Positions 3,575 to 62,339 of a stretch of 64,000 nt of DNA are shown here, one piece after another; position 1 is the stretch's first letter, and each line of letters opens with the position of its first letter. The notes under the pieces are model-generated. The model was not told where the DNA came from. It saw nothing but the letters and a program-made list of their open reading frames with translations, and searched no databases. The stretch comes from Trichoplax adhaerens (lineage: Eukaryota > Animalia > Placozoa), in assembly GCF_000150275.1 (NCBI RefSeq), contig NW_002060943.1, positions 798,246 to 862,245 on the forward strand. Direction: 5' to 3'. The translations under genes and the position numbers were made by a program.

Positions 3575-3649
3575 TAGACACTACAATATTCGGTTATTGT
3601 AATCTGATCTTTATTAGACACTACAATATTCCGCTATTGTAATCTGATC
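3575..3649. repeat. Tandem duplication, 2 x 40 bp, each with a small hairpin
   Basis: TAGACACTACAATATTC(GGT/CGC)TATTGTAATCTGATC occurs twice. Confidence 0.9.
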
Positions 3650-36131: not shown

Positions 36132-39100
36132 ATGAAGTTTAGTTCTATCTCCATCAGCTTGCTCGTAATTACTTTAACGATAAGGCATGTAGCTCCTGTA
36201 ATTCTTCCATCAGGTAAGTAGAATAGTGTATAAATACCAGTTGATAAATTTTATTTGAAAGATTTTCTCCTTATGCTAGTATATTACCGTAGAGTAGAAT
36301 AAAATTGATCGACTATTAGTGGCATTAGAAAGCTTTGCGCTGTATTATTTGTTAGTCAGTCTAATATCTATCGCGCTAGAATTGTAATAAATTCATACTA
36401 AGTAGTTAAATGATCGTCGCGTCCTTCAATATTTTCACTGAGCCTTAAGTTATCTATGTTAGTGAAGGTTGTATGTTACAGATCGTTTTGATCCACTATA
36501 AATTCTGTCAGTAATGGTCTTCATTCTCCTAATTAGTCTTCTGTTACTGTTACCACGTATGTAGATTGCACAAATTCAATAACGCCATTCCTTTCACAGT
36601 ATTCATTATGAACCATTGCTGGGCACGATTGTTGATAATCATGTTGCTAATTAAAGTGAACTGAATCCTTTCTGATTAATCCATAGAAGAAGATCCTAAT
36701 ATTGGAAATGTCAGAAATAAGACACCCAGTATTGGAGAAGCTAGCGCCACGATAACCGGTACAACGATGAATATTGCTATCCCATTTAGGGGTGACTACT
36801 CTGAAAAGATGGTAGCATCCCGTGTAAAACAAAATTTCAAATGGTACCGGTACACACAGAACTGTCAAATTGAGATTGAAGACATTCCTGTGCAAAGTTC
36901 TTTCAAGTACAATAATTCACAAGGCTATCTCTTTTACAACATCCAACTTACGAATATCGATACCTGCTTAAAGCTTGATATAAACTTAGCTGCAGACAGT
37001 AAACAAGTTAAGAATGGACTTTTTCGAAGCTTTGCATGGGGTATACCTGAAATAGGTGTGTAAAATTTAGACTAATCACCCGTACGAATATATTTGTACT
37101 TGTTGGCTTATTATAATCAGGACCGCCGGTTTGCTTATACAGTTTATCAGTGATACTAAGGAATAAATGAAAGTCAAAGTAATGTCAGTAATGCTTAGCA
37201 TCACGTAAAATGATGAAATTCGCCATTATGAAAGTCCACTTCTACTAGACACTATATTCAACAGTCAACTGCATTCACTTTAGAATCTAATAATATTCTA
37301 TGATAATATCAGCATCAGTAGCACTTCGTCTAAAGATTAATTGAAGAGATCTATATTGCACTATTATACATACCGTAAGACTTACGGTAGTTTTGTTACA
37401 AAAGTAAACTGATCGTCGTTTATATTTAATAACAAGAATCATATCCACTTATTTACTGACATAAAATTCGATTTTATCATAGCGTTCTTCTCTGTTTAAT
37501 TTAACAAATTAGCGAAACCTGTTACTCCTACATATGTCCACTATGAAACGGATAGCGAAAGAAATTTGGCAGCATTTTATTATAAATCTTTGCCATCAAA
37601 TAGTTTGATGATTGTTCCTAATTATTCTCTAAAAATTACAAGAATTAACCTGATTTCTCTATCTATACAAGAGGTAAGCTTGATACCATTATAGTAAGAT
37701 TTCTAATCAAGCTCAGGCTGTAACCGCTAGATTGCAGAAATATGCTTATCCAATTAAGGGTTACATAGCATTCCCGCTTTAGATTGCACTACCTTGTATC
37801 CATTATGCAATGACGATAAATCTTCTCTTCATTAAAATTTACTTCATTCTACAAAATACAATTATACATACAGTTTCATGTATAGTCTCTGTATATCGTT
37901 AAGCTGTTAACTAACTCCTTTTATCCTGTACCGATGACGTAATTATGTAACTAATCCTTTATACAAAAGCGTTGTCCATCATTATGATTTCAATCTATTG
38001 GTTCCAGTGTCCAAACTGACGCCTTATTATGATCGGCAATCACTTTTAAAACGTTCATATAATTTCTATTTTCTCACTGGGGACTCATGTTTTATGCATT
38101 ACAGTTGTTAAAGGTGTAATGGCAAAACGTTCATCATTCCCAATCAGACTACCAGCCTATGGATGTTGATATATCAACATTCTAATTTGTTATCCCTTTT
38201 TCTCAAGCCTGGCTGGACTAGGCTAGACCGTCTGTGGACATTATTCATATTTCAAATTAAATGCGTGCAAGAATAAACCGGTTGAAGAGGTTTAAATTAA
38301 TTATGATCACGTTTTGCCCAAATTGTTTTTCGATCGTTATCTTTCATAATCAGACACTGTACTTGCACAGTAATCAAAAACTATTGTCTATAACAAAGAT
38401 AACAATCGATATAACAATAGAAAAGCTTATTTTTCCCTTATTGTTTCACCATCATTTCCGCGGGAAATGTGGGCCATGACAATAACGGGTGAGCCTCTTA
38501 TCATTTTTGGAGCTTTTTAGGCCATGGATTAATTTCTAGACTAGCTTCAAAAGCCATGAAATTTAAACTAGAAAATTTTTAAACTGATATTTTCAACACT
38601 CGAGAGAATGGTATCACGTTTCATTTGGGATGGAAATACGATATTTTTAATCAAGGATTGTTATTCAACTTCTTCATGCCACAAATCAAAATCAATCATG
38701 ACATACAAAAATTAATCATCCTTTTTTTTCGATCGTAACCGTGTCATAAGTAGCCTAAAGTTACTTTCATTTAATCGCTAACCTTAAAATTGTAAATCAC
38801 ACTTCTACTGCACATGTTATCAGTAAGATTGTTTAGTTTAATTTTTCCTTTAAATGTTTTTACTTACACCTACAATGAAGCGATCATGCATTATTCAAAC
38901 CAACGCCCAGATATTCACGATGTATAAACCATCGTACCTAACCCAAGTTGTCATCGTATCGCTTGATATATCATTCACAAATGGGCATAGTATCCTGCGA
39001 AATGGGTTTTCAAAGCCAATTCTCTCTATGTACATGATTTACTACCAAAGTTGATCAACAGGACATAAAAGCTGCGTTTTAGTTGCAGCGATTTTGTCGA

Positions 39101-42100
39101 TGAATCTTGCTAATGTTGGACTCCTTTGATCGATAGAAGTACAGCACGGTACTGTATAGTGCTCTTTTATTCTATATGCAGAACTATAATTATAATATAA
39201 GCACCTGATTGATATTTACTTTTCAACTTAATCTCCCTTTGCTATACAAATTCATCGCATGCCATGCTTTGCAAAACAATTTCCATAACTCTGTAAAACG
39301 AAATATATAAATATAGAAAATGTTGATGAACGGGTATATGATTGTAAACCATTATACTACCAGTCTTTAAAAAAAACGCTAATTAAACAGGCTAAGTCAT
39401 AACTTATTGCTATTCTATACGAATATGGTGAAGCTACGGAATTTATTAATTCATAAATAATTACCCACTACCTAATACATATATAATGCAAGCAGAGGCA
39501 ACCGCATTACTTTAACAACCCCAATCGACAATCTTTTTAGTTTGCAACCATTATCTTCTGATTGCTACAGTAACAGAAAATATGACTTGTCATATGGGAA
39601 TATAAATGAAATACTTATGACTAAATCGAATAACAAGTAGTTTAGTTACGCATTCGCACACTTGTTTTAACATAACAGATGAACTGGAATCAGTTAAAAA
39701 GGATTGATTGTAGGCGTATGCTGGCACTATTATTGAAGCTACTCTTGCAGGTTAACACATAGACAAAATTAATTAAATAATGAACGAATTAAACTAACCT
39801 CTAGCTGAAAATGAGGCAGATAATTAATTTATAATAATGCATGTATCAGCCGCTTTAGTTACTCAAAAGATTAAGTTCTCAATTTTTCAATTCATCTGCT
39901 TTCCGTTTATACAATAAGCAATTACGGTCTGCAATCATATAACCTTATGTTCAAGTTGTATTATTACTATAAGTGTAATAAAAGAAGCTTTCAATAAAAT
40001 TACATACTGTCAACAATTATCTAGTGCCGATATACAGCATAACCACCATTTATTTTCTGTGCGATCTCATTAAGGACCCGATAAAATTCAATAAGAAGAG
40101 TCGCTTTGCAATACGATCTTCACCTACCGAAGTCGCATGTATATTTTCGCCGCAAAAACTAAGTATAACCCAAGTGATGACGAACAAGATATATGATTTT
40201 TTATGGAATAACCCAAAATATAGCAAGTTATCTTCTCCGGTTTACTGGGATTCCACAGGAGGTATGAATTTTATAATTGTGAATGATTAAGCTTTAGAAA
40301 CTGCATTCTAAATATAGAAGATATGCTTTTATCTTATTAAAAATAATAGCCTACATTACTTTTTGTTATACAATGCGAAATGTAGCCAAAGTTGATTACT
40401 GAATCTATTGCAATAGTTCTATTCAAGTAAAACAATAGATACCATACTGTACATAACAGAATGCAATCAATAAATAGCCATTAATTCGTTTCCTATTTAA
40501 AATTATAATTCAAGCGAATAAAAATATACGTTACGGTACCAGATTTAATCATATCGAGCAGGCTGCAGAGAAAACGCCTTTAAACCTTAATAGTATACCT
40601 CAATATGATACTGTTACGGTTTAAGATATTATGTGATAATGTTATTGAAGAAGAAATAGACGGTTACGATTAGATAATCATAAATATTATGATCTGTTAA
40701 TATTGTGAGATTCAATCGTTAATGGACTTCCATTAACGAATGTGTAGAAGTAAGGTACTTAATATGCCAATGACGTGTAATAACCAAAATGGCGGTTGTC
40801 ACACTTGTAGGGAATCCGTTAGATCTTAAATTGTTAATTGGCGCTATAATATTATTAGCGCATAATAATATCAATTATCATATATTTGTTCGATAGTAAT
40901 TAATAGGATTACAAAGTTATAGAAAAGACTAAGTTATACATAAGAATAATTAACAGGTGGAAAAGGTGTAGATTTGATACAAGTATATAAGAGGTTGTAA
41001 TTTACCTCGCTAGGCAGGAGGAAAATACGGAGACCTAATAAAGTTAGTTTAGTAAATTTATCCAGACGCTTCTAGTCCGCCTTTACTGTTGACTGAGGTC
41101 CTTCGCTGAAGTGGAGCGAGTAGTGACGCCTGGTGGCAGTTTTACGGTAGGACAGAGGAGAGTAGGATAAGTGTGGAACGGGAATCCGATTGTTGCAAAC
41201 GACGTTGTGACAGATACTAATAATTTTTTAGAAAATAAAATTGATTGTTTACGAGCTAAAATTAATATTTCAGAAAATTGATAGGCTTTGAAAATTCTTC
41301 TCATTATTTTTAAATGCTAATGCTACCTTGTTACATTTCCATAGAGGAAACTAAAGTATACTTTCTCTTCAATTATTTTCACACTAAGCCTGTAGAGTAG
41401 TATCCCACATCTTCTGCGATAAGTATGCTGGTGACTATCCCTGTAAAATCGTAAAGGTAAGCTTTTAAATAATTGCTTAGTTAGTATCTATATGTTATTT
41501 CATTGATCATTTTCAAATATTACAGTATAGTATCGCCACATGCGATTTTACAGGGGTTTCTTATAAGATTATAATGTTGTAATGTAACTAGTATTGTGAT
41601 TGTAGACTGTTAGCCATGTTTAGTATAATATACGGTAGATATTTATCCTAAGAAATATTTGGTAGCTATAACTATAGACTGTAGTAGTAGAGACTCTATG
41701 CTAGAATACAGATGACTATATACAGTAAGGTGTTGAGTTACTAATAAGGCTATAGGTAAAAATAGAACTGTAAATCATATATTACGATATGGTTAATTCA
41801 TTGTACTTTGGCTGGTGTGAATAATGTCTACGTAAGTACTGTAGTCGTATCCATATTGGATTAATGTTGGTCCGCAGTAGAATAGTCTTACTAAGAATAA
41901 TTTAACTATGTGTAAAATAAGGTAAAAGGTTGCCATGCGGATTGTAGCTGCGAATGCTACGAAAAGTATAAAAGCATGCAACTTTAGATTATTCTGTTAG
42001 TTCGTTCTAGAAGTCTTTAGTAGTAGTATTCGGCTAGAGTAGAGCTGTGTGTAGTTAATCTTTGTATAAGATTCAATAAAGCCCTTATTTTTCTAAAATT

Positions 42101-45100
42101 TGGAATCTCGTGATTGGTATATATCCCAAATGTATAACCTATAGTTTGTAACAATATTTAAATACGAGTACATTAATTTAAACATAGTAAAGCTATATAT
42201 TGTTGTAAGGTTGCAGCATAAGTCATCTTCTTAATATACATTTCTGTTACTAAAGCTATTACTGAGATAATTGTCTGTTTAAGAAGTTCAATAAGTCTCC
42301 ATATTCAATAAGATAAAAGAAACATTGCTACCTAATTTACTATAACCCCACAGTTATAGATCAAGCTACTTTCTACATCTAAATTGGATGATTTAGCTTA
42401 TTTCTTCATACTTATTTGGTAACCTAATGAAGTTATTATAAGAGCAAGCAGTACCACTTTTGCACGTTTCGTTGTATTTATATTTGCTCACGGCCATTAA
42501 TGTAATCCATCGCTTAGTAACAGTATTTAAATATCAATGCATGATCAATCACTGTAAATTGCATTCAGTGACAAGTATTAGATCTTCAGTTCGACATTAA
42601 TTGACGATCTATACGATATTTCCTTCTATTGCAGCTATTGTTGTGATAGCAATAGCTTATAAACGATAAATCACTGCATACATTCAATCAAATAATTAAT
42701 GTTATATATTTTAAGAATATAAAATCAAATTATTGTATTTTATTGTCATAGTTATGCAATTGGTGGACTTAAAAACTAAAATAAATAGTTTAATTTCATT
42801 ATCGATAATCTCTTTTCAATGTACACAGGATGGTCACAGTAATACTTCTTCACCAGAAGATAAAACAATAATACTACAGAAATATGGCGATGAAGATTTA
42901 AAAATTATTGAAGTTATTGATCAGGATGATCGGCAGTTTTACTTACCTATGCTGCCTGATGGCACAACAAATGAAACGATAGCTATTCGCTGCCCTAGTG
43001 ATGTCTTTAATAGCAATGCCACTTCCAAATATCAAGATCCAACAAAAGGATCCATCATTAATTTACAACCTGCTAAACTGGTTATTTCCATACTACCTAC
43101 ATCTAAATCCCCTAGTACAACTGATGGCTATTCGAATAAAACAACATCAGCCAAGTTAACGAGTATATTATCGGATACTACCCCAAAATCTGATGCTCAA
43201 ACGGACCAGATAAAGTGTAAGTCTACTAGCACTTAGTCACCTCTAAAATTCGTTATAATCACTCTTCATATTATAATTGATTATTTCACTATGTTCACTA
43301 CTAGATATTTTTGCAGCGATTTTAGCCCCTCTAAGTATTATAGTCATATTGGTACTGGTATATATATGTCGTAGGTAAATGCAATATATATTATATATAT
43401 ACAATTGTAGCGCAATAACTCGATAGCTTAAAAAATTATTGCTTTTGATAAACTATATGCTGATAAAACCAGGTATTAACATAAGTGCCCATCCTAATAA
43501 TCTTAATTCGTTACTTTTATTCAGTAAATCCCCAAAACCAATTCCGGAACCGACGTAAGTTTATCATCTATAAAGAATTATACCAAATTCATTAATAGCT
43601 ATAACCTTATATTAAACTGAATTACCCTGTCAAAGAATTGATCAATAATTAATTAAGTTTCAAATCATTATCGTATGAATTAATTAGTGATAAATTTTTC
43701 CATCAGTGTGTGTCTGAAGGGAAATTTAGAAAAATAATTTATTCCGATATACTGCTACGATGTATACGCCATTAGTGCTCTTGTCCCGAGGTATCGTAAT
43801 TAGATGATAACAAAACTTTTTGAATCTTAAAGCTAAGATTACTAGATTTCTATTTAAATTGTTTCAGTTATTTAACAGGTCTTCAGTAGTAATAACAGTC
43901 ACAGTAGTAGTCAAGAAGGTTACATTAATTCTTAGCAATACTTCTTGCAATTTTCAATTTCGCTGCTGTCTAGCTCCCTTAATTCCTGCTAGAAAATTTT
44001 GCGTTATCCCCTTAAATCGTTACAATTGATTAGTATTCTTTATAAATGACAGTTGCAGTAGTAACCACGAAGGTTTAATCAATTTTTTTCAGCATCTCTT
44101 CCAATTTCTATCAATTAGCAAAATGATCTATGGTAACATTGCAAGTACAAGGAATTACTACTTGCAATCATGTTTTAGGATGGAAGTTTTAGGATTAGAA
44201 ATTATCCTAAAACTTCCATCCTAAAAGATGATTGCAAGTAATAATTCCTTGTACTTGCAATATTACCATACATCATTTTGCTAATTGATAACACTCTTGC
44301 ATCTCGAATCTATATTTGGAATTTCCTGAAATCAATTAGAAGTTATAGCTAATGGCAGTACCCTGACAAATTCCGTCCGTTGCTATTCTAGCATTTTTAT
44401 GCATCAGCCGTTGCCAAAGATATACCAATTTAATCGCATCATTAATTCACCATGCTTGTAATCATGTCATAAATGACTAGCTAGGATAATTTAACAGAAT
44501 TTAAATAATTTCACCTTCGAATTTATAATTTAATATCTTCAGATGATTAAAGACTACTTTCAATAACTCTCAAAATCATGGCTAATGTCATACATGACTA
44601 ACTTAGATATTTTAAGTGAATTTAAACAATTGTATTTCATCTTAGTTCAATATCTTCGGACAATTTTACACTACTTTTCAATAGCTTTCAAAATAAACAG
44701 TTATGTCATAAATCAATAACTTACATAATAAATTTTGCTTCAAAAATTTACGATTTAATATCTTGGGATAAGTTTAGACTTATTTTCAATAACTATCGAA
44801 ATTAAGTATTACGTCATAAATAAGTAACTTAGATCAGATAGACAAATGTGAATAATTTTGTTTCCGAATTTACAATTCAATATCCTCGGACAAGTATAGA
44901 CTACTTTTCAATAACTATGAACAGCAAATATTGATCAAATTAATCCATATTTTTTTATTATATTTTCTTATAGGCCTCCATTCTTTCCCATACAGCCTGG
45001 TAAGTTAGCCGCAGCAAAATTTTAATACCTTGTTATCTTTCTTAAGAAGTTGAAGTAAATTTGACAATTAAACCTTAATAGTATCACCAAATGAACCGCA

Positions 45101-45999
45101 AGTCTCTGAGAGCGATTTGAGTCTAGGAGTAAGAGAAACCTTGATACAAACAATAAACATTGAAATTAACCTCGCTTTTCGCTTAATATAATTAATAATT
45201 AATACTCTTTAACTTATTGCCATAACTATTGTGAGTATCCTTTATATTGATGTAGTAATAAATGAATATTACTTCTTGCATAGCAAACGGGTAGGCCACC
45301 AACAGAAAATTTTCCAAATACCGCAGATTATGGACATGCCAATAATCACATAGATCCGGATGCAATGGATAATTATGGTAAGTCAGTTGGTACATACTCA
45401 CATTTCCTTCATATTCTTCTCATAAATGAATACTATAAGTCCAATGTAAGAAGGGGGCATATTTTAAATTGTATTTTCCATTCATTTTGATATTCTAGGT
45501 CGTCCAACAGTAAGTAGAAGATCTTTACTCTTACGGATCATCTCATTTTTCTTATTATCAATGCCATTAGATCGGATTATAAATACTTATTAACATATCA
45601 TCAACTATCATTTCTAAATCCAATCCTATGCGTCATTTCCTCACCTGTATTAGTTCTTTTATTTAATATTCATTAATTTAGAAAATTTATTCAATAGCTC
45701 AGTGTTGACATCAATGTACAAATATAGCGTTTGCTATTAAATAGATTATCTTTAGTTTTCATATATTTCATTATTTGATCCTTAAATTCATGTTTATTCC
45801 GGCTTTTCCAATAACTGTCAATGTGTCCCCGTAGATGTTAAATAATCATCCAGAGAATAACCTCCATGGCGATGGTGAAAATATTACTACCACGAACCAG
45901 TCTTTAGGATGTCCGCAATGTATTACTCATCACGCCTTATATAAGAAATCTGGTAAAACAACGGAAGGCGACTATGAAGAATATCTTTTGCGGCTGTGA
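36132..45999 (+). CDS. Uncharacterised type I single-pass membrane protein (gene C), ~510 aa, FN3-like ectodomain, Pro-rich/Tyr-motif tail
   Basis: Frame-consistent exons: 36132-36213 (signal peptide MKFSSISISLLVITLTIRHVAP), 36687-37055, 37513-37673, 40075-40261, 42857-43216 (domain plus S/T stalk), 43305-43374 (TM YIFAAILAPLSIIVILVLVYIC), 43525-43554, 44974-44999, 45306-45377, 45499-45509, 45835-45999. Ectodomain and TM exons align with gene D in sequence and phase. The tail exons are less certain. Confidence 0.8.
40612..41212 (+). mobile_element. Solo LTR, family B (single copy in window)
   Basis: TGTTAC...GTGACA imperfect inverted termini. Perfect TSD GATAC (40607-40611 and 41213-41217). 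TATATAA at 40984, AATAAA at 41037, and a G-richer 3' part. Confidence 0.8.
41439..41555. mobile_element. Possible small MITE
   Basis: Perfect 13-bp inverted termini CCCTGTAAAATCG and CGATTTTACAGGG, 117 bp end to end. No clear TSD. Confidence 0.4.
41578..42128 (+). mobile_element. Solo LTR, family A, copy 2 (intron of gene C)
   Basis: TGTAAT...ATCCCA termini. TSD AATGT on both sides. TATAAAA at 41967 and AATAAA at 42075 give a U3-R-U5-like order. Confidence 0.9.
44109..44290. repeat. Long inverted repeat / foldback MITE-like element
   Basis: 87-bp arms (44109-44195 and 44204-44290), about 4 mismatches, 8-nt loop. Begins and ends with TA (possible Tc1/mariner-type TSD). Confidence 0.9.
44464..44930. 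repeat. Degenerate tandem repeat, 4 x ~110-120 bp (intron of gene C)
   Basis: Recurring ATGTCATAAAT, AATATCTTCGGA and ACTACTTTTCAATAACT motifs at ~115-bp spacing. Confidence 0.85.
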
Positions 46000-48900
46000 G
46001 TGTCATTGTATCCAACGTTCTGCCATCGAAGATATCAGTACCTATAGTCAATATAAAGAAACTATAGTCTGATTAAGGGCTTGTTTATTAATATAGAACA
46101 TTCAAACCCATTTTACAACATTTTATGCATTGATCCTGCGTAGACATTAAGTTATATATGAATATCGACTTCTTTTCTCCACATTAATGTGATTTCATTA
46201 ATTAACTAATCAATGTTATGATAGTAACAATTCAACTATGAGGCAAGAAGTTTTGATTTTATTATCTATATGTAGTTCCAATTCACCACAAAGATATTTA
46301 TGATTTTGATTTTAATTAGTTATAGCTTTGACTTGAAGTTATATCTTTTCTTTATGTTTTTTTGAAAATGCAGTATGAAAATTAATGTAATTGCTATCAG
46401 CTTTTGAAATCTTTTCAGTTTGAATACGGGCAGCATCCTTACATTTATTAAATACTATTTGCTCTCCGTTGACTGGAATATCTATAATAAGCAAGAGTAA
46501 AGATATGAGTAGTTTTTTAAATTGCTCAAAGTGTACAGTAGGTATTAGATTGGATTAAGAATATCATTTTTTATATAATTTATTCAAGAAACCATTGACT
46601 CTAACAAGTACTTTGTAAACGCTGTACTTGTTGGATTTTGATCTTTATTTTTTCTTTTATGTATTGAAATAAAGTTAACGTAATTTTCCACTAATGATAA
46701 TAGGAATGCTATCAATTAATTTTCCTAACACTAGATCAGTTGAAGAAAAACATTTTTAAGTCAACAGCAATTGCTTAAATTTAGCCTACTACTTAAGAAT
46801 CCTGACTAATATACTGGCAACTAACTGTATGGAAACTAGATCAGTCGACTTAAAATCATTTTCTGTTTGACATAGTTTCAAACCAAGTTAATTTATTTCT
46901 TATGGATATTTATATGAATATTAGCAGGCAATTTCCAAACATTTTACTAGCTGGTTCAAGATTGTTTAAAGTTTGAAGATAATCAACGAAAAGTTAGCAT
47001 TCTCTAATGATTGCAAGCTTGAACACTAGTTTTGAATTTACGTCCAATCAGCTAAAGTTAGCCAACTTATGATGGTTGTGAGCTGGATATTAGTGTTGAA
47101 TTTAAATCTAATCTAGAAAACTTCACATATATAATGATCGAATTGTTGTCCAATAAACCATTCTTCCAACTATTTCCTTAAATTGATACAGAAAAGGATA
47201 GTCTACACATAGAGTTAGGAATAGAGATTTATTGCTGCTATTTACATGAACGTACTGGTCATCCAGTCTATCAGTACGATAAGTTAGCCAATTTTACATC
47301 TCAACGATTCTAGTAAAGCAACTTCTAACATTCCATTGATATCAGTCATCTTTTTTAGCCTTTTCGTAAACATATCTATTAAAATTTCTAATATTTTTTT
47401 TCTGTTTATAAGTAATCAATGCTAACTTATTCCTCAGGACAGTTAATTGTAATACCAGCAAGTATTGCACTCATTGATGCAGAATCATTTTCAGTTACGT
47501 ATAATTAATCAAAGTTAACTTATTCCCCATTCATAGTTACTAGAAATGGGCAAGTTCAAGGTCTAAGCTTAGCTTAGCAAACCCATCAGCTAAAGTTGTG
47601 GACTTTATGTTATGTTTCTGCTTGTTAGCAAGGCTCTAAAGTCATGCGAGTACAGTATTGTCACTAGTGCCCATACATTCGTTCATCATACGAAATAAAA
47701 TCAATAAGGAAGCTATGCTGATATTTTAATATATTTGATATCTATTTTGTGAGGAGAGTAGCCTAAGTAACCTAAACTAACTTCCTAATATGCCAAGTAC
47801 ATAGTAGTATTAATTCTAGCAAATCATTTTTTAAGAGCTGCATTAGTTATTTCAAGGTCATTTTAATTAAGGTGCAATTAACTAAAGCCAAGTTCTGATT
47901 GATATTGATTAAAATTCTGGTCGGCGATTCTGAAAGCATTATATCCATTTTTAAGATTATCTTTTTCGGCCTTATACAGATTTGAATAAAGTTCGCTAAC
48001 TGTTGTTAATAGTTACTAAAATACCAGAAAGGACTACAAAAACTTTACAATACTAAGCGATTCAAATCCTATTCCTGTTACCAGTAAACAAATAACATCG
48101 CTTTCGTTAATTTTTTCATAGTTTCGGAATCGAGCAGCAAAAGCTTTACATTTTCCACGAGCTAGGAAATAAGTAATCAGTTACAGAACGGCAATTCATT
48201 GCATTCCCTAGATTTAACTCATTTATGCAATGAAAATTTAAAGTTAGAAATATTTCTCATTGATTCATAATCGAGAAGATTGACAGATATTTATATCCAC
48301 GAGAATTATAAGCTTTTGTTTTATATTTTCAGAACTTCATTGCCACAATATTACTTGCAATTTAAACACTTTACCAAAATTTTACATTTAAAATACCGGT
48401 AATTCGTAATCTTTAAGTAATGCATTGAAATAGTAATGTTTTCTGTAGAATATGCTGCTGTTTTTTAGTCATTTTATTTCTAAAATCTACTAATGCAAGA
48501 AGTTTCCTCTTGCCCACCAGAGCTTTTTAATTTTTTATGTAGTATCTCAAACGCTAGAGAATCAGTAATAAAACTTGTTAATATAAAACTGTTGTTGTAA
48601 TCTATATGTTAAGTAAAGTGAGTAGAATAAATTTCGTACTCTTATTCTACAACTATGCTCATTTTAGTTCTAAGTATGTCAAAAAATGCACAGTATGCTT
48701 TGACGATAGTTGTGATGTTATAAAAGGAATAAAGAGTCAGCATGCTGCATTAAGATGGCTCTATACCCTGCCTGCTGAACGATTAAATTATAATTAGCAC
48801 TTCTGAGGTTATCTTCGCACCTTACAAATAAATCAATATACATCAAATTTACATTTACATCACAGTTATATCTTGTGTGAGCTTAACATCACATTCGATC

Positions 48901-50666: not shown

Positions 50667-53600
50667 ATGCAAAATTTACGTAAACCACCCAAACAACAAG
50701 CAAATAAATTTATCCATTTATCTAGGATATTATTAAACTTATCCATCATATTCAATCTATCATTTCAACAATGTATGGCAACTAATCCTCAAACAGGTAA
50801 AAAAATAATCTTTAAATCTTTAAATGAAAAGGACGCTATTTAAACTACGATCGTAAAGGCTATTTGTGTCAGAAGTATTGTCCATTTAATAAAAGACGCA
50901 AACAGATTATTTTCAACATCAATTGCTTAGTAACAACAAAATGTTTTCCTCAATTTTTATATTCATATCAATTACTTTTTTTAAAATAATATTGACTTAA
51001 ATAAAGTTGAGTCTAGGGATATCTTCGTCTTCACTATCGATCGTGACCTATTTACATGGTCAACAAGGATTTACTATTTCTCTCTATTCTCTTCATAATC
51101 AATGTATGTGTAACAACAAGTTATTGAAAACTACGATTAAATATGAATGGTTTTATTCTTTCTCAGGTTAATTATGCTTTATTTACAGTATAATAGGCAT
51201 TCTGCTTGAGGTTAGCGTTACTTTTTTGTATAGCGTTTAGCATAGAGAATTGATCAGCTAAATAGGAAATCATTCGACTCCGATACAACAGTAATCATAT
51301 TAGCTATACATTATCCTAGCATGATAGTCGTTCTAGGATTTTACTAACACTCCCATTTCATACTATTCCACGATATCGATTCGTCGATCGCAAGGTAATC
51401 TTGTCTAATTCAAATTATCTTAGTATGATAATCGCTCAAGGATTTGATAATGCTCTCATTTTGATATTATTTAATGATTGATTTGTTAATTACAAGATGA
51501 CCTTTTGCTATCTAATCCAACCCACATTATCTTAGCATAATAATCACTTAGGGATTCTGATAATATTCTTAATCGATATTATAGAACGATTGATTTATCA
51601 ATTGCAAGGTAAACTGATCGTATCTAATCCAATTTTATTTAATTGCACTCTATATGGGTGCTTTAAACGATAGATAACATTCCCTATGGCATTGGAAATG
51701 CTACCGTTACAATTATTGGTAATCAAGCGACAATTATAATTCCATTTGCAGCCAACATTAATCCAGAAAATTTAAATCACGCTAAACATCTCATATCTTA
51801 TCAGTGGTTTTCCTCCAATTGCCAAACTGGTCAAGTCAACTTTAGGGACAAAACCAAGAGCAATCCTTTTCTCTACAACCTTCCATATGGAGAAATACAC
51901 TATAGCTTCATCATTTTTAGCTTTTATACCTGTTTAAAAATGAAGGTCAATCTAACTAGCATAATTCAAGGTGATGTTCTAGCGAGTAATCAAAGTAAGG
52001 GAGTGGAATATGTAGATGTTAATCCTTACGTCCGTTTTTTTTCCTGGAGAACCAAGGACTACGGTAAATGAGACTATTACTTACTCATTTTAACTGAATT
52101 TGATCCACTTTGATACTGGTATATTGCCCAGTCTTCACTAGCACTACCACTTTAGCAAATACAACTTGAAATAGTTGCAGTATCGGCGTGATTTTCTAGC
52201 TCAAAATAGAATCAGTTTAGTGTATTACAAAACCTTTTCATCATTTAACTCTACTTGATAGAAGTCGAATTGGTTGCAATAGTTAAGAGTGTCATCAAGT
52301 CTTCTGCTCACTTCACTCTAAAAAGGAAAATTATACCAACATTAACATGACTTACTGATTTTAATTAAAATTTTAACTAATTTAATGTATTCTAAAGTCT
52401 CACTATCCCTTCATTTAAGTTGGTAGAACTTGAAATAGTTGCAGTATCAAACTAATCTCGTCATTTTAGTTTGGTAAACAGGAATTGAAATGGTTAGATT
52501 TATGACATGATGTTCTTCCTTTAATAATTACATTTGAACTAGTAAAGTGCGTTGAAAAAAACCATATCTTTTCTATTGAGTTGATAGAACTTGAAATTAT
52601 TATCATATTAACGCTATTTCCTTACTAGAACTAAACTTGGACCATTCTATAGTGTTCTATAATCTTTCCAGCACTATTGCTTAGTTAATAGAACTTAAAA
52701 TTGTAGTAATATTGATGAGATTTTCTTACTGGAACTAAATTTTGGTCAGTCTACCGTGTTTTAAAGTCTTCATATCATTTCATTTTAGTAGATAAAACTT
52801 GTAATTGTTACAGTATGGATAGGATACCAACATTCATTTAAGCAATATAGTATTTCATAGTACTTACTAAAGAATACCGGATGCTTAACTGATTCAACTA
52901 ATCACCAGTAATAGTATTCTCCACTGACTAAGGTTCAAATTTCACTGCCTTTTTTAAGCAACAAAAATGAATCGAATCGATCAGTCAGTCCACCTTAAGC
53001 TTAGTACATCACGAAAGAATAAGTCATGATCTTCAAAGCAATGTAAATGATGATCTATGCTATCGATTAATCGATATTGGACATATGATTCTATTCTAAA
53101 ACACCGTTTCATTCTCTAGCAATACCAAATGCTCCCAGAAGAATAAGAATTAAAGCCGACTTAAGTAAAGAAGGAGCTCAAGTACTGATGGATTCCAGTT
53201 CCTGGACTTACAACTTAATTGATAATAAATTAACCTGCCGGGTAAAGATAAAATCAATCAATCTAGCTGCAAACAAGAGTAAGGTAAGATTACTATGGTT
53301 AAAATAATGCTAGTATTAACAACGGCAGAACTATTTAAATCCAATAATCATGATCACTGATGCGAAAGGAAAAAAATTAGTGATCCCATGCCGTAGTTGT
53401 CTTTTATTATCATCCTTCTGCCAGGTAATTTTAGTCATCTCTGATACCTCTCTACTACTATTGAATAATCTATGATAATTTTGAAGGAATGATTATTCCC
53501 TAATTACAAATCGTCTTGCCTACTTCAAGTTCCATTCTTACCGTCAAGGCAGTCACAACTGCTTAGTAGTTAAAGGAAAAAAATGTCATGTCATATCTTT

Positions 53601-56600
53601 TTAATTGCAGAACTAAAGAGAACTTCGGCAATTTAGTTTTCCTCGTAATGAAATGATTCCTCGTTACTAATTCATACCATTCGCCGATATTGATTTTCAT
53701 GATAGTCATTCACAATAAGCATTAGAACCAGGAATCATGCTACCAACAACTCATTGATAACTGAGTTATTTTTTCATTTTATCAAAATAATCTACTCCAT
53801 TTTTTGCCATTCTATCGTCAATCAAAAAGTTTTGCAATTCATTTTCGTTACTGGTAATCCATTCAACAAGACACACAAATACCAATTCTTTATATATTAT
53901 ATAATATAATTATAATTTCTTTTCTGACTTCTCTAGTGCATTAATTTCAAGCAAGACCGAATGAATTTCAGGTCGTGTAGGGTTAGCTATTTCTTACGGT
54001 AGTTTAGGAACAATATCACTGTACTATTACTGGATATGCAATAGGAATTCAGAGTTCTTATGGAATATATATTACATTTTATAGGGGGTAGAAAAACGCT
54101 ATTGTTAAAGGAATGTCGAGATTCAATTAATCCGTTCTATATCATACAGTTCTTCATCTTTCCTATTGCATAGTCATAGCTAGATAGACTAACTAAGTTA
54201 TAAGTACTATTGACAACTACAGCTTTAAAGCTTGCTTAAACTTTAGCTATCATCTCTCGTATAAGAGATAGTTACGCTACTGTAATAAAAGTATCTCTTA
54301 ACTGTTCCATCTAAACTAATCTAACTTCTAACCAAACCATTATCTCAGGAAGATAGATTTTAGAAAAGGCTTTTGTTGCAGAGTTGAGAATAGTAAGTAG
54401 CACAATAATTAACTCGAACAAGAATCTAATCTAAATTATCCTAAGCCTAAAAGAAGTGAAGTTAAGTGTACTCCAAGCTCAACTTTGTAGTTCTTAAATA
54501 CATTTTGTTTAATCTATTTACGAGGATAAAATTGCCAAAGATCAGACTTGAATCAACAAAAAGAAGACTTTTCCCCTAAGAGATCATCAATATCTTTTTC
54601 TGTACAATGGAATCTGCACAATATATCACTACTCTTCTATTAATATCCAACACCCGTAAAGGTGCTGGCCATCTTCATAATTACAGTACATACAGTCATA
54701 TTGATCTATTTACCATACTTAGCTAGCTGACTAATATTCCTAATCAATAATTGTAATATGCCGTAGAAATTAACTATCACCTAATATTAATATCACGATA
54801 ATATCTATTCTTACAACCTAACTATGCTAAATAATTCTACTATTACTCCAATTAAATATGAAGGAGCATCACTGCAACTTTCTAATCGTCAATTAGTACT
54901 AAGGAAAAATAAATCAATAGTATGCTCACTTTGCAGAGTTATTCATCTCAATAAAGATGATAAACTAACAAAGTCGACTTAACGAACTATAAGTCGTATA
55001 AAATTGATTATTTTCTCTTACAATATTGCCTATTACAGAATAGTCTGAACAAATTATTTATTTCATCATTTATCCATGCAAGAGATCTAACGAGAAATGC
55101 CTATGCTTTTAAATCATTAAGATAATTTAAATAAAATGGATTAAATTGACCTTATTTCGGAAACGGACCATACTTGCAGTATGCTCTATTTTAATCTTCC
55201 CTATATAGCATATACCGAGTATCTATTTTATATTTTATGTATCAACATTACAATGTTTCTCATATTTTTCAATTACAATACGTAGAATTTAGGGATAGTA
55301 TTTCCCATTGATTATGACAAAGTGCTTTAAAGATCAAAGCAAAGCCTTTTTAATTTCTCACAAAATCTTTTATATAAACTGCTCCTTGCATAAAAATATC
55401 AAGAACTATCAATCTTTACTTCTTCGGTCCAGAATTGTCTAACTGTTTACAACCAAATTTACAATTTGTATATATATATACAATTGATTACGTAGATTTT
55501 TACGAGCCTTATTGTAAAATATCTTGTCAATACGAATTGTGAATACTATCTACAAGTAGAAACTTGTAAAATTTGACAGTCTAATCAGCAAGTTGAACTA
55601 TTTAATATAATCTTATAACCATATAATCTTAATCTTAAGCTCTTTGGGAGTTGCCCATATTAATTTGCTTTGTATCCATAAGAAATTTCTTAAAATTGGA
55701 ATATTTGACAGTTAGCGTTACTGAGATCTTGTCATAGTCCAAAAACGAATTGCCATTACATTAGTAGCCTACTATCCTAACTCATAATAATTGCAAATTC
55801 TACCTTTAATACCGCTTATGTAAAGTATTAACGGAACTGATAGGAGAATGCTTGATGTAGCTGTCGCGCTACTAAAGTATGATTTTGGACTAAAATGACA
55901 CTAAACAGGATTCTAAATTTGACCGTCAAAGACTATCTAATTTTAATTTCTGCTTTTTATTATTTTTAAGAACGTCACCGATGTAACTGCAGAAGACTTG
56001 ACTTCATGCAAACAAAGTATTTTAAGCTGTAGATGTAAGATTAAACTACGGAAATTATCTTTTCTACAATTGCGAGGTTATGCGCTTTACAGTAAATCCG
56101 AAGTCAGCGGTCCATCCTCTCCTATCTACTGGGATAGTACTGGAGGTAATTATTTCAAAAGTCTACTCAAATAGATACTTGAAATATAGTAAAATTTACG
56201 AGATATTTATCTAATAGCTAGTGTATTCCAAGAACATAGTAATTGATTAGAAATCGCTTTGATTTTAATAGCATGCTAAAATAGATTCAATATTCCATGG
56301 ATATAAAAGTTGCAACAATTCATACCGTACTAATTTGTAATTAAAGCAGTATAAGTAAAGTAAAATTTATAATCATAATATAATCGAGATTAATTTCATT
56401 TTAGCTCATTTACTTCAATGAATGGCATGTAAATGGAGTGTAATAGTGTTATACAGCTAACGATTCTAACTCTGTCTGTTGATCAATAGACCGCATGAGC
56501 ATGATTTGATAATCTCAACTAACTTTTGGCTTGTTTTATTTATTATAGCTTGCAAAACAATTACAGATATTTCTTGTACCGGAATGCTAAATGAGTACGA

Positions 56601-59600
56601 ATGTAGGAATACAAAGGCATGTTTATTAATTATTCAGTTTTAAAATGGATCTTGTTGGCTAATTTGGGATAGTAGAACGATATTATTTAGGTATTAATTA
56701 GGAAGGAATAGGCTTCAAGTAGTATTTTAGGCCGCCTTTAGGACATATTGAAATGTAACCTTGCTTTCTTCCCTACCCTATGCTATCTAGTCATTATTTA
56801 CCTACCTTTAGACATAAAAATTTATAGCTCTTAGTAAATATCGTTATATGCACAGACTATCAATTGCTACCATTTCAGAACATTGTACAGGTAGCAATAA
56901 ATCGTTTTAATACGTTACAAGAAATAGCGAGATAGCCCTTCTGCTCGTCTTCAAAATTCGCAGTTGTAAGCAGCTACTATACTTTTCCTCAATTTATACC
57001 CATGAGTACGCTACTACAAAACCAATCTCCAAAAATGAAGATAGAATAAATTTAAGCTGTTCTTTTGATCCTCCATGAACAGCTACTATAGTAACACAAA
57101 TGCTAAGCGAAATGATCTCCATTCAATCCATGTATTACAATATACCGATACTGAATACTTGATTATGAAGGAAAATGTACTAGAAATAATATGCTAGAAT
57201 GCTGTATACTATTGTGATATATACCAATCACGAAATTCCAAATTTTAGAAAAATAAGGGCTTTATTCAATCTTATACAAAGATTAACTACACAGCTCTAC
57301 TCTAGCCGAATACTACTTCTAAAGACTTCTACAACGAACTAACAGAATAATCTAAAGTTGCATGCTTTTATACTTTCCGTAGCATTCGCAGCTACAATCC
57401 GCATGGCAACCTTTTACCTTATATTACACATAGTTAAATTATTCTTAGTAAGACTATTCTACTGCGGACCATCATTAATCCAATATGGATACGACTACAG
57501 TACTTACATAGACATTATTCACACCAGCCAAAGTACAATGAATTAACCATATCCTAATATATGATTTACAGTTCTATTTTTACCTACAGCCATATTAGTA
57601 ACTCAACAGCTTACTGTATATAGTCATCTGTACTCTAGCATAGAGTCTCTACCACTACAGTCTATAGTTACAGCTACCAAATATCTCTTAGGATAAATAT
57701 CTACCGTACATTATACTACACATGGCTAACAGTCTACAATCACAATACTAAGTTACATTACAACTATCTTTATTTAGCAGTCTAATCACTATGTTAAGTT
57801 CATATAGCAACTCTAAATATCTACCATATAGCTAAGAAAAGCATACAAATTCCTATTTAATGGTAATGATCAATAAACCTGCCGTCGATAATTATAAGCT
57901 ATACAAAGTAAATATAGAATTATGCATAATTATCTCCTTTACAATTTAGAACAGTGTAATTATTATTGACGCTGACACGACAGATACGCATAGACTTAAA
58001 ATTATTACTATTAAGATTCTCAGGATATTATGCTTATTTATTACTGTAAAATACCCCCAGGCAAGAAAGATGGGATTATTTTTCATTTTTACTATCTAAT
58101 GGAATTTAACAGTGCTGATTATTATTAATTTATCTTTTTATCAATTGTTAATTAAAGAACGATAGCCAGTTGTATCAACCTGTAGCTGATAATATCATCG
58201 TTCTGCAGAAGAGTAAAGATGGGAAATTAAATACAGTTGAAATTACTGGTAGGGATAATCTGCTATTTACATTAAGATCATCCGCGGATGCCTTGAGAAA
58301 TCAAACATATGTCCTTAATTGCCCGATCGTTGCAATTCAAGATCGATCATGGAAATACCTCAACGAAACTGTTGGGTCGGAGTTTGAGCTAGTATTAGCC
58401 AAAGCAACAGTCATCGATAAAACGCCTACAACTACAGCAAGAGCCTTTCCAATAGCAACGCCAACACCAACTTTCGGTACTGTTGCAGAAACAACAAGTG
58501 AAATTATAATTACTACCGGGAATCCAAATTCCAGCACAACTGCTATAAAAAATACGACAAGTAGAATCATATCTCAGCATTCTTGGACTCAAACAACTCT
58601 ACCAAGCCTACGAGCTCAAATTATGCCCTGTAATAAATCTCTTCATACTTGACTTATGCCACATAAACCTACTCATCTATACGTTGTATAATTATCGATG
58701 CTGGAAGTAATTTAAAGATTATAATAATTACCAATTTTTCATCATATAGACTTTACAGCAGCAATTATTGCATTTTGCGGATGCTCAGTAATTATTTTCA
58801 TGAGCCTATGCTACTATAAGTATGTCATACCGTATAAACATGGATGATACAATTAATTAATAGAATAATGCTATTTATACTTAATTCAACTCTATTTCTA
58901 GCAATGTCTCTCATCTGCAGTTGTATCAAGCTAATATCTATTTCTTCATGAATTGCAGGTGTCACCGACCCTCTAAAGCAGGGTTATATATAAACTCCAC
59001 AATGTAAGTTCTTCTTTTCTGCATCAACAAATTTTATTCTACATAAATAGCGATAAATTAAAATTAATTGTGTAAAGGAAACATTGTAAAACAAACTTTC
59101 TCTTTATCTAGTTAGATTAAATCCAATCGTTAGAATATATTAGTCTCACAATATTAATTAAAAGTAGTTTCAAGTCTATTTATCGCACCCCAAATAATCC
59201 CAACAATCTACAGTTGCAGCGTTACAAAATAGAGAGATTTAATACAAAATATATATACTATTCCACAATAATATTATAGTAAATTTAAATTTTATATAGC
59301 ACTTTACTAAGCATGTCTCATTTTGGAAAACCAGCTCTTTGCCATATAGGTGTAATCTGCACAAGTTTTAATTTGCTGACTTTGCTGACTATCTTATTTT
59401 TAGGTTTATCAAGGCTGAGCAGGCCATTGAAACTCGTAAGTTAGCGTCTTAAAATAATCTGTAATGTCATTAAATTAACTGTTAATTTTAATGATAGCGA
59501 TACAAGGCGTACCTCTCGCTCATAAATATACCTGTCAAGGATATAAACAAGCTTCTGTAATGGAAGTAAGTAAAAATTAATGAAAGTCTCTAGCAATATC

Positions 59601-59965
59601 TAATTGCTCATATCGACATAAGATTAAACACTAAACCTAACCTATCCTACCATTTTATTATTGTGTAGATCAAAGCTAATCCCCTGGCAGTTAATTTAAC
59701 TCAAAACGATGAGGAATGTTCAGTTGAGATCGGCGAATATCCCATCGAAGATAAGAATTTCATAGAGTTTGCTAGTCATTTCAACCAAGTCAGCAATTGT
59801 AAGACACCTAATATTCGGCCACAAGAGTTAACAAGGAGTCTTAGCAGTACATGTAGCAGCAATATACTCCATGATAGCGAATGTTTAATATCAGACCGAT
59901 ATAGCCGGGAGAATATAATAGAGAAGCAAGATGTGCAAAGAGCTATCGACTATGATTCCAACTAG
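50667..59965 (+). CDS. Uncharacterised type I single-pass membrane protein (gene D), ~604 aa, paralogue of gene C
   Basis: Exons 50667-50796 (ATG in GCCATCATG, signal-like), 51674-52063, 53120-53283, 55971-56145, 58186-58629, 58750-58819 (TM YFTAAIIAFCGCSVIIFMSLC, 70 nt as in gene C), 58959-59003, 59404-59435, 59498-59565, 59669-59965. Motifs shared with gene C: IGxAxxTIxG...IxIPF, NCQ, TCLKxxxNL, RxFxW, PxxP at the domain start, KIxxINL, KLSxxQ, SSP[VI]YWDSTG, I[IV]LQK, CP. Confidence 0.8.
51309..51635. repeat. Degenerate tandem repeat, 3 x ~110 bp (first intron of gene D)
   Basis: Recurring ATTATCTTAGCATGATAATC...GGATT...GCAAGGTAA...TCTAATCCAA. Confidence 0.7.
52160..52820. repeat. Degenerate tandem repeat, ~6 units of ~100-160 bp (intron of gene D)
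   Basis: Recurring GATAGAACTTGAAAT(A/T)GTT-like motif at about 52164, 52261, 52426, 52587, 52691 and 52795. Confidence 0.65.
57213..57762 (-). mobile_element. Solo LTR, family A, copy 3 (intron of gene D)
   Basis: TGTGAT...ATTACA termini. TSD ACTAT on both sides. Near-identical to the other two copies. Confidence 0.9.
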
Positions 59966-62289: not shown

Positions 62290-62339
62290 NNNNNNNNNNN
62301 NNNNNNNNNNNNNNNNNNNNNNNNNNNNNNNNNNNNNNN
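62290..62339. other. Assembly gap (50 N)
   Basis: Run of N. Confidence 1.

What the first reader, a model, noticed from the sequence alone, without database searches (positions are those of the whole stretch)
36132..59965. Hidden tandem pair of orphan cytokine-receptor-like single-pass proteins
Seen: two genes, mostly missed by the ORF track, can be rebuilt and confirm each other exon by exon. The layout is signal peptide; beta-rich domain 1 with two conserved Cys (NCQ, TCLK) in a phase 1-1 exon; domain 2 starting with an FN3-like PxxP (KPVTP / IPNAP), split by a phase-0 intron and ending SSP[VI]YWDSTG; a third conserved domain; S/T stalk; 70-nt TM exon ending in phase 2; and a tail with Tyr motifs and no kinase, phosphatase, TIR or SEFIR domain. 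Known: class I/II cytokine receptors have tandem FN3 domains, a phase-0 intron in the second FN3 and non-catalytic tails. Inference: this is an undescribed receptor family, possibly cytokine-receptor-like, in an early-branching animal. I do not recognise the family.
Basis: partly seen in the sequence, partly recalled or inferred. Interest (0 to 1): 0.85.

Follow-up and report, generated by a model that had tools for sequence, protein, structure and literature searches.

The report
Orphan placozoan single-pass receptor gene pair
Two neighbouring Trichoplax genes encode related membrane glycoproteins so far seen only in placozoan-like sequence; one is shown to be spliced and expressed, but nothing links them to cytokine receptors, so they look like ordinary lineage-specific orphans.

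Summary
Two tandem + strand paralogues (gene C 36132-46072, gene D 50667-59965) share exon order, exon lengths and intron phases, and are 27-35% identical in protein. The genome holds only these two copies. Spliced RNA contigs from three runs confirm gene C from exon 4 to its last exon. The window lacks 2 nt near C's end; transcripts read on to ...KETIV.

The genes are only partly hidden. D is TRIADDRAFT_51327 plus TRIADDRAFT_51328 in T. adhaerens and TrispH2_007156 in Trichoplax sp. H2. H2 also annotates a 589-aa gene at C's position.

The cytokine-receptor reading is not supported. There is no Pfam, PDB-sequence or profile match. The class I Cys motif and WSXWS are absent, Box 1 is not shared by the two genes, and no JAK or STAT signal was found. 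Domain 1 folds only weakly as a generic Ig-like sandwich. Whole domains 2 and 3 could not be tested because the joined step was left out.

Best reading: placozoan-restricted type I glycoproteins that work as non-catalytic receptors or adhesion molecules. Interest is modest.

The parts
36132..36213 (+). Gene C exon 1: ATG and signal peptide (MKFSSISISLLVITLTIRHVAPVILPS), ends in phase 1
   Evidence: GTAAGT donor. Two RNA contigs carry 635 nt upstream of exon 4, which equals e1+e2+e3 (612 nt) plus a 23-nt 5'UTR (records 1 and 9).
36687..37055 (+). Gene C exon 2: domain 1, 369 nt, phase 1-1, with two conserved Cys (NCQ, TCLK)
   Evidence: AF2 on the three-sequence alignment gives pLDDT 57.9 and a 7-8-strand sandwich.
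37513..37673 (+). Gene C exon 3: first half of domain 2 (A-KPVTP...), phase 1 to 0
40075..40261 (+). Gene C exon 4: second half of domain 2, ends SSPVYWDSTG, phase 0 to 1
   Evidence: contigs begin at 40073/40075, and the joint 40261|41389 is seen in X12, X4 and X10.
41389..41456 (+).
   Evidence: joints 40261|41389 and 41456|42829 in three runs. Translation.
42829..43216 (+). Gene C exon 5: rest of domain 3 (1 Cys, 4 N-x-S/T sites) plus Ser/Thr-rich stalk, phase 0 to 1
   Evidence: contigs cover 42827-43216 and the joint 43216|43305 is seen..
43305..43374 (+). Gene C TM exon: 70 nt, phase 1 to 2 (Y-IFAAILAPLSIIVILVLVYICR)
43525..43554 (+). Gene C exon 7: juxtamembrane KSPKPIPEP (the only Box-1-like PxxPxP)
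   Evidence: joint 43374|43525 in X4 and X10. Motif scan.
43707..43737 (+). Gene C alternative terminal exon: a short-tail isoform ending ...T-VCLKGNLEK-stop
   Evidence: joint 43554|43707 in X4 only. Translation.
44974..44999 (+). Gene C exon 8 (PPFFPIQP)
   Evidence: joints 43554|44974 and 44999|45082..
45082..45128 (+). Gene C exon 9
45284..45377 (+). Gene C exon 10
   Evidence: joint 45128|45284..
45499..45509 (+). Gene C 11-nt micro-exon GTCGTCCAACA, flanked by AG and GTAAGT
   Evidence: table 5c: the letters CGTCCAACA stand between 45379 and 45835 in X4, X10 and X12. Located in the genome.
45835..46072 (+). Gene C last exon. In the window as assembled the frame stops at 45997-45999 (...DYEEYLLRL). 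Transcripts of organism A carry 2 more nt after 45979, and Trichoplax sp. H2 has a 1-nt deletion there. Both read on to 46072 (...CGCECHCIQRSAIEDISTYSQYKETIV).
   Evidence: table 4; the H2 gene model at this place is 589 aa.
50667..50796 (+). Gene D exon 1: ATG and signal peptide, ends in phase 1
   Evidence: P0001 and P0005 map here.
51674..52063 (+). Gene D exon 2: domain 1, 390 nt, phase 1-1
53120..53283 (+). Gene D exon 3: first half of domain 2 (A-IPNAP...), phase 1 to 0
55971..56145 (+). Gene D exon 4: second half of domain 2, ends SSPIYWDSTG, phase 0 to 1. Absent from all database models; splicing not tested.
   Evidence: Identical in H2.
56549..56616 (+). Gene D exon 4b: 68 nt, encodes ACKTITDISCTGMLNEYECRNTK with the same Cys spacing as C. 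The donor is GC (AAG|GCATGT), also in H2.
58158..58629 (+). Gene D exon 5: rest of domain 3 plus Ser/Thr-rich stalk. The T. adhaerens model TRIADDRAFT_51328 uses an earlier phase-1 donor near 58560 instead.
58750..58819 (+). Gene D TM exon: 70 nt, phase 1 to 2
58959..59003 (+). Gene D exon 7 (CHRPSKAGLYINST)
59404..59435 (+). Gene D exon 8
59498..59565 (+). Gene D exon 9
59669..59965 (+). Gene D last exon including the stop (...AIDYDSN)

Best explanation
Genes C and D are a tandem pair of fast-evolving type I single-pass membrane glycoproteins, so far seen only in placozoan-like sequence. From the N-terminus each has:
- a signal peptide;
- domain 1, a disulfide-bonded Ig-like beta-sandwich in one phase 1-1 exon;
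- domain 2, beta-rich and split by a phase-0 intron;
- domain 3, with four Cys (three of them in a 68-nt exon), also split by a phase-0 intron;
- a Ser/Thr/Pro-rich stalk that looks mucin-like;
- one TM helix followed by basic residues;
- a cytoplasmic tail of about 150-175 aa with no catalytic domain.

Shown: gene structure, paralogy, copy number, and transcription and splicing of C.

Inferred: they sit at the cell surface and act as non-catalytic receptors or adhesion molecules. Ligand binding or clustering would be passed on through short linear motifs in the tail that recruit cytoplasmic kinases and adaptors. These motifs are a Pro-rich juxtamembrane stretch, acidic Tyr sites and a C-terminal ETIV that looks like a PDZ ligand in C, and YINS and other Tyr sites in D. 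The genes are not demonstrable members of the class I or class II cytokine-receptor families.
For: - Paralogy: exon-by-exon similarity and identical phases and exon lengths, including two 70-nt TM exons and two 68-nt exons.
- Copy number: only two copies in the genome.
- Expression of C: spliced contigs with GT..AG joints for every C junction from exon 4 to the last exon in X12 (an RNA library), X4 and X10. Exon depth is well above intron depth.
- Reading frame: open through all 13 exons of C. C's exon 4 to last exon are 98.9-100% identical in Trichoplax sp. H2 outside the frameshift cluster at C's end, except the three short tail exons 7-9, which are 85-94%. The located splice sites are kept, and H2 annotates a 589-aa gene at this place.
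- Topology: N-x-S/T sites are concentrated in the ectodomain exons, the stalk is 46-49% S+T+P, and Arg/Lys follow the TM helix.
- Tail: no catalytic or other Pfam domain.
- Language-model look-alikes of the H2 D protein are all Ig/FN3 cell-surface proteins at scores of 0.84-0.86. This is a lead only.
- Distribution: an exhaustive profile search of 1.84 billion representatives found only the D cluster and one 133-aa ORF. That ORF lies on an AT-rich Logan contig with the same exon 1-3 layout.
Against: - No fold is established. Domain 1 has pLDDT 57.9 and neighbours at chance-level Z. The domain 3 model is useless (pLDDT 46.7). Whole domains 2 and 3 were never tested.
- The tail motifs are 3-6 residues long, are not shared by C and D, and could be chance.
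- Surface location, glycosylation and phosphorylation are all inferred.
- Splicing and expression of D were not tested. Database models of D skip exons 4 and 4b, and exon 4b has a non-canonical GC donor.
- The relative outside Trichoplax comes from an unnamed organism.
Confidence: 0.6

Rival explanations
1. C and D are true, highly diverged homologues of class I or class II helical-cytokine receptors. Two of the three ectodomain modules would form a cytokine-binding homology region and the tail would dock a JAK-like kinase.
For: - Type I topology, module boundaries in phase 1, phase-0 introns inside domains 2 and 3, and a non-catalytic tail.
- SPKPIPEP next to the membrane in C.
- A conserved aromatic/Ser motif (YWDST) where WSXWS would sit.
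- One YxxQ in D's tail.
Against: - No WSXWS and no CX(9-10)CXW...C motif (against the definition in PMC1963337).
- Domain 1 has only two Cys and no internal intron.
- No Pfam hit to fn3, Tissue_fac, Interfer-bind or any receptor family.
- hhalign of the domain 2 half-exons against Trichoplax FN3 gives 0.5% and 1.4%, in the wrong register.
- The Pro-rich box is absent from D.
- No STAT_bind or JAK FERM_F1 match in the genome. This is a weak negative, because the controls did not ring.
Confidence: 0.05
2. They are mainly adhesion or recognition molecules (cell-cell, self/non-self, or microbe recognition) whose fast-evolving ectodomains matter most. The tails serve only for anchoring and trafficking.
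For: - Very fast divergence: the paralogues are about 30% identical, and the relative in another organism is only 33% identical in domain 1.
- Mucin-like stalk and many N-glycosylation sites.
- A Hydractinia allorecognition cluster is among the language-model look-alikes (lead only).
- C's transcripts end in ETIV, a PDZ-ligand look typical of junctional proteins.
- A short-tail isoform exists.
Against: - Only two copies exist, and they are nearly identical between T. adhaerens and H2 in the ectodomain exons (0-1 change per exon). That is unlike hypervariable recognition loci.
- The tails are long (about 150 aa or more) and keep their intron phases between the paralogues.
Confidence: 0.25
3. 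Gene D is a decaying or remodelled duplicate. Because exon 4b has a GC donor, exons 4 and 4b are skipped together (243 nt, frame kept). D's mature protein then lacks half of domain 2 and the Cys-rich start of domain 3, as in the H2 model TrispH2_007156.
For: - The 555-aa H2 model joins exon 3 directly to exon 5.
- The donor is AAG|GCATGT in both T. adhaerens and H2.
- No database protein contains D's exon 4 or 4b.
Against: - Both exons keep open frames.
- The invariant SSPIYWDSTG motif and the exact C-x7-C-x8-C spacing of C's RNA-proven exon are kept.
- Exon 4 is identical and exon 4b differs at one base between the two strains.
- GC-AG introns are a known minor class that gene predictors usually disallow (own knowledge), so the skip may be a prediction artefact.
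Confidence: 0.15

Closest known systems
Database models of the same locus: TRIADDRAFT_51327 (B3RII2, 285 aa) and TRIADDRAFT_51328 (B3RII3, 319 aa) in T. adhaerens; TrispH2_007156 (RDD41744.1, 555 aa) and the neighbouring 589-aa gene in Trichoplax sp. H2
   Same: They cover gene D (exons 1-3, and exon 5 to the end). In H2 a gene also sits at C's position, and its length fits the 13-exon model built here.
   Different: - The T. adhaerens annotation splits D into two genes. TRIADDRAFT_51327 has a false 3' end. TRIADDRAFT_51328 starts inside a transposon ORF (MATFYLILHIVKLFL).
- All D models lack exons 4 and 4b.
- No protein with C's domain 1 or domain 3 was found in the protein libraries.
- All are unnamed, apart from UniRef's name 'Cadherin domain-containing' for B3RII3 (presumably automatic). 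That name is not supported here: Pfam finds nothing and hhalign gives 0.2%.
Class I cytokine receptors (gp130 / Domeless type)
   Same: Type I single-pass layout, beta-sandwich modules with phase-1 boundaries, a phase-0 intron inside a module, a non-catalytic tail, and a Pro-rich juxtamembrane stretch in C.
   Different: The CHD cysteine signature, WSXWS, a shared Box 1 and any Pfam or profile match are all missing, and no JAK/STAT signal was found in the genome.
IgSF-type non-catalytic receptors and adhesion molecules (single-pass, Ig/FN3 ectodomain, Tyr-motif tail)
   Same: - Domain 1 sits in a phase 1-1 exon and has one Cys pair.
- The AF2 model's nearest structures are Ig C-type and V-type domains.
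- Language-model look-alikes are all Ig/FN3 surface proteins.
- A stalk, a TM helix and a tail with Tyr motifs are present.
   Different: - No Ig, I-set, V-set, C2-set or fn3 Pfam hit was found.
- The two Cys are only 33 residues apart, and no Trp follows the first one.
- The structural scores are at the level expected for any beta-sandwich.

Membership tests
Class I cytokine receptor | CX(9-10)CXWX(26-32)CX(10-15)C motif in the first FN3 fold (PMC1963337) | tested here: not met
   A regex run on every exon translation gave no match. Domain 1 has only 2 Cys, 33 residues apart. Motifs spanning exon joints were not scanned.
Class I cytokine receptor | WSXWS at the C-terminal end of the second FN3 fold | tested here: not met
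   There is no W[ST]xW[ST] in any exon. The conserved motif at that position is SSP[VI]YWDSTG.
Class I cytokine receptor | Box 1 proline motif next to the membrane, conserved in the family | tested here: inconclusive
   C has SPKPIPEP in exon 7. D has none. H2 changes C's motif to SPKPIPKP.
Class I / class II cytokine receptor | Sequence-profile match to fn3 or to receptor ligand-binding families (Pfam) | tested here: not met
   hmmscan with E up to 10 on every exon, and on P0005 and P0002, gave no relevant family. The same fn3 model finds more than 100 other places in this genome.
Class I / class II cytokine receptor | JAK and STAT partners encoded in the genome | tested here: inconclusive
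   The six-frame search of the whole genome found no match to STAT_bind (PF02864) or JAK FERM_F1 (PF18379). The controls rang nowhere, and exon splitting lowers sensitivity.
FN3 domain (domain 2) | Profile similarity or FN3 fold over the whole domain | tested here: inconclusive
   Exon-by-exon hhalign against 9 Trichoplax FN3 domains gave 0.5% (exon 3) and 1.4% (exon 4), both in the wrong register. The whole spliced domain was not searched or folded because the joined step was left out.
Immunoglobulin superfamily (domain 1) | Ig-like beta-sandwich with a B-F disulfide; Pfam Ig families | tested here: inconclusive
Cadherin (UniRef name of B3RII3) | Match to the cadherin repeat profile | tested here: not met
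   No Pfam Cadherin hit. hhalign of domain 3 against 8 Trichoplax cadherin repeats gave 0.2%.

The most novel reading that the evidence does not exclude
Domains 2 and 3 each start in phase 1, are split by a phase-0 intron and end in phase 1. On this reading they are a very diverged cytokine-binding-homology-like pair, and the SSPxYWDSTG motif stands in for WSXWS. The family would then be a pre-bilaterian relative of helical-cytokine receptors that signals through Tyr motifs without a canonical JAK.
Probability: 0.05. Interest if true: 0.75.

Novelty: new member of a known kind. Interest (0 to 1): 0.3.

Why it matters
If the best reading is right, this is one more lineage-restricted surface receptor or adhesion family. 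It is useful for placozoan cell-type and signalling studies, but it does not change how receptor evolution is understood.

The practical gains are corrected gene models:
- Gene D is a single gene, not two.
- Each gene has an extra 68-nt Cys-rich exon.
- Gene C has an 11-nt micro-exon.
- Gene D has a likely GC-AG intron.
- The reference lacks 2 nt and so truncates gene C.

Only the unlikely cytokine-receptor reading would bear on the open question of when cytokine-type receptors arose.

Tried and rejected
- **Phase-1 acceptors for exon 5.** I first placed them at 42857 (C) and 58186 (D) to repair the frame after exon 4. RNA joints show a separate 68-nt exon and the phase-0 acceptor instead.
- **Inverted 540-bp repeat in the same intron of both genes (41590-42145 and 57196-57747).** It is not a conserved regulatory element. 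It is a high-copy interspersed repeat (at least 694 candidates, 96-97% identity), and the D copy is absent from H2.
- **Bacterial hits P0003 and P0004 from the profile search (E 2e-8 and 3.5e-4).** These are repetitive cadherin-like and Big_13 proteins whose score adds up over repeats. hhalign gives 2%. Rejected as homologues.
- **Cadherin, from the UniRef name.** Rejected.
- **Other searches that found nothing.**
  - Exon 5 of C with the search for homologous proteins.
  - P0005 against PDB sequences.
  - Rfam over 36-60.2 kb.
  - Domain 3 in the ESM Atlas.
  - Paper searches for the locus tags and accession numbers.
- **AF2 of the exon 5 part of domain 3.** pLDDT 46.7, so it was not used for a fold search.
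- **The search of earlier findings near the locus.** Empty.
- All searches used single exons by reference or database proteins by id, and scripts translated exon by exon.
Full report
**Source.** The window is contig C1414:798246-862245 of a 105.6-Mb, 1414-contig genome with about 30% G+C. Database proteins that map exactly onto the window are labelled Trichoplax adhaerens. Upstream, at 26091-26492, lies a class C GPCR exon (7tm_3, E 1.8e-18).

**Observation.** I translated the + strand of 36-47 kb and searched it against 47-61 kb. Three coding stretches are conserved:
- domain 1: 27.6% identity over 127 columns, E 3.6e-9;
- the ...SSP[VI]YWDSTGG stretch: E 1.8e-5;
- domain 3: 33% identity over 88 columns, E 4e-7.

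- The signal-peptide exon ends in phase 1.
- Domain 1 is a phase 1-1 exon of 369 nt (C) or 390 nt (D), with NCQ and TCLK.
- Domain 2 starts A-KPVTP (C) or A-IPNAP (D), is split by a phase-0 intron, and ends in phase 1 after YWDSTG.
- A Ser/Thr/Pro-rich stalk follows (46-49%).
- The TM exon is exactly 70 nt, phase 1 to 2.

The family has exactly two members in this genome. Domains 1 and 3 find only these two loci. A degenerate DNA pattern for P-[VI]-Y-W-D-S-T-G-G hits only these two places, and its reversed control hits none.

**RNA evidence for gene C.** Exon 4 ends in phase 1, but the obvious acceptor of the domain 3 exon is in phase 0, so I laid contigs of four runs on 40040-46039. The runs were X12, an RNA library of organism B, and X4, X10 and X8, three runs of unrecorded library type. 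Spliced contigs with GT..AG ends were found in X12, X4 and X10, at depths well above those of the flanking introns. The joints are:
- 40261|41389
- 41456|42829
- 43216|43305
- 43374|43525
- 43554|44974
- 44999|45082
- 45128|45284
- a last joint with extra letters between its two sides, which locate to an 11-nt micro-exon at 45499-45509

A 68-nt exon (41389-41456) therefore sits between exon 4 and the domain 3 exon. It encodes A-CRVVSHIFCDKYAGDYPCKIVK.

Two contigs carry 635 nt upstream of exon 4. That equals exons 1-3 as modelled (612 nt) plus a 23-nt leader. This is indirect support for the first three junctions.

Exon-by-exon translation gives an open frame through 13 exons, 565 aa in the window as assembled. 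One run (X4) also shows exon 7 joined to 43707, which would give a short-tail isoform ending 21 residues after the TM exon.

**Reference discrepancy at C's end.** Contigs of organism A carry two extra A after 45979. Organism B and the Trichoplax sp. H2 genome have a 1-nt deletion there. Both changes move the frame into an ORF ending at 46072 (...EENIFCGCECHCIQRSAIEDISTYSQYKETIV). The result is about 590 aa, which fits the 589-aa gene annotated at this place in H2. The window therefore lacks 2 nt, either through an assembly error or as an allele.

**Gene D.**
- A profile of domain 1, run against 1.84 billion representatives, found TRIADDRAFT_51327. This is a 285-aa T. adhaerens model with exons 1-3 and then a false 3' end. 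Its cluster mate is TrispH2_007156, 555 aa, from Trichoplax sp. H2.
- A later search found TRIADDRAFT_51328 (319 aa). It starts inside a transposon ORF and then covers exon 5 to the end.
- Mapping these models gave exon 1 and the four tail exons.
- All of these models join exon 3 directly to exon 5.
- D nevertheless keeps an intact exon 4 and a 68-nt exon (56549-56616) encoding A-CKTITDISCTGMLNEYECRNTK. The Cys spacing is exactly that of C's RNA-proven exon. The donor is GC, not GT, in both T. adhaerens and H2.
- With both exons D is 636 aa. Skipping both removes 243 nt and keeps the frame.
- The tails of C and D have no detectable sequence similarity. They do share intron phases (2-2, 2-1, 1-0), which shows common descent.

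**What it is.**
- No exon, nor P0005 or P0002, hits any Pfam family at E up to 10.
- P0005 has no PDB sequence match.
- The only relative outside the D cluster is a 133-aa ORF on a 5.1-kb Logan contig (SRR30660616, 32% G+C). It is 33% identical to C's domain 1 and 31% to D's. The contig has a C-like signal-peptide exon, the same phase 1-1 exon, and a following exon that starts A-KPIP.
- The bacterial hits in that search are repeat artefacts.
- AF2 of the exon 5 part of domain 3 failed (pLDDT 46.7).
- ESM Atlas look-alikes of P0005 are all Ig/FN3 surface proteins at 0.84-0.86. This is a lead only.

**Test of the cytokine-receptor idea.** The defining features come from PMC1963337.
- The CHD Cys motif and WSXWS are absent.
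- PxxPxP occurs in C only.
- Exon-by-exon hhalign against nine Trichoplax FN3 domains gives 0.5% and 1.4%, in the wrong register.
- Six-frame searches for STAT_bind and JAK FERM_F1 find nothing. This is a weak negative.
- UniRef's 'Cadherin' name for B3RII3 is also unsupported.

**Left out.** The folds of whole domains 2 and 3 therefore remain untested. This is the main gap.

**Conclusion.** The family is an orphan type I glycoprotein pair, so far seen only in placozoan-like sequence, and most likely acts as a non-catalytic receptor or adhesion molecule (confidence 0.6). The cytokine-receptor reading is possible only as a remote, untested homology (about 0.05). Both genes already exist as unnamed models in Trichoplax sp. 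H2. Novelty is that of a new member of a known kind, and interest is modest.

Noticed in passing
window 41590-42145 (+) and 57196-57747 (-): A roughly 540-bp interspersed repeat sits in the same intron of both genes, in opposite orientation. It is high-copy in the genome (at least 694 candidates, 96-97% identity). The copy in D is absent from Trichoplax sp. H2, so these are independent recent insertions. The model TRIADDRAFT_51328 wrongly starts in its ORF.
   Followed up: yes
window 40612-41212: A second repeat, 601 bp long, lies in C's intron 4. About 20 full-length copies in the genome are 97-99% identical. It is absent from the H2 genome at this place. RNA-run contigs end exactly at its borders.
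   Followed up: yes
window 45979-45981: The window lacks 2 nt relative to transcripts of the same organism label (X4, X10). H2 has a 1-nt deletion here. The assembled frame truncates gene C by about 25 residues.
   Followed up: yes
window 45499-45509: An 11-nt micro-exon (GTCGTCCAACA) with canonical AG/GTAAGT flanks is included in contigs of three runs.
   Followed up: yes
window 56616/56617: Exon 4b of gene D is followed by GCATGT, a probable GC-AG intron. It is conserved in H2. This may explain why gene predictors skip exons 4 and 4b.
   Followed up: partly
window 44974-45128: C's tail exons 8 and 9 differ from H2 at 7 positions within about 110 nt, four of them within 6 nt. One contig of X10 (organism A) carries the H2-like version, so two haplotypes seem to coexist.
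   Followed up: partly
window 43707-44088: An alternative splice from exon 7 to 43707 is seen in one run (X4). It would give a short-tail isoform of gene C.
   Followed up: partly
window 5168-27000: ORF fragments of what look like two tandem class C GPCR genes lie upstream. 26091-26492 hits 7tm_3 at E 1.8e-18. The N-terminal exons did not reach Pfam thresholds.
   Followed up: partly
L009 (Logan SRR30660616 contig, 5151 bp), 2767-4432: A relative of gene C in an unnamed AT-rich organism. It has a signal-peptide exon, a phase 1-1 domain 1 exon (33% identity) and an exon starting A-KPIP. Unlike C, it keeps the Cys in exon 3 that D also has.
   Followed up: partly
window about 62290-62340: A run of N (an assembly gap) lies downstream of gene D.
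   Followed up: no
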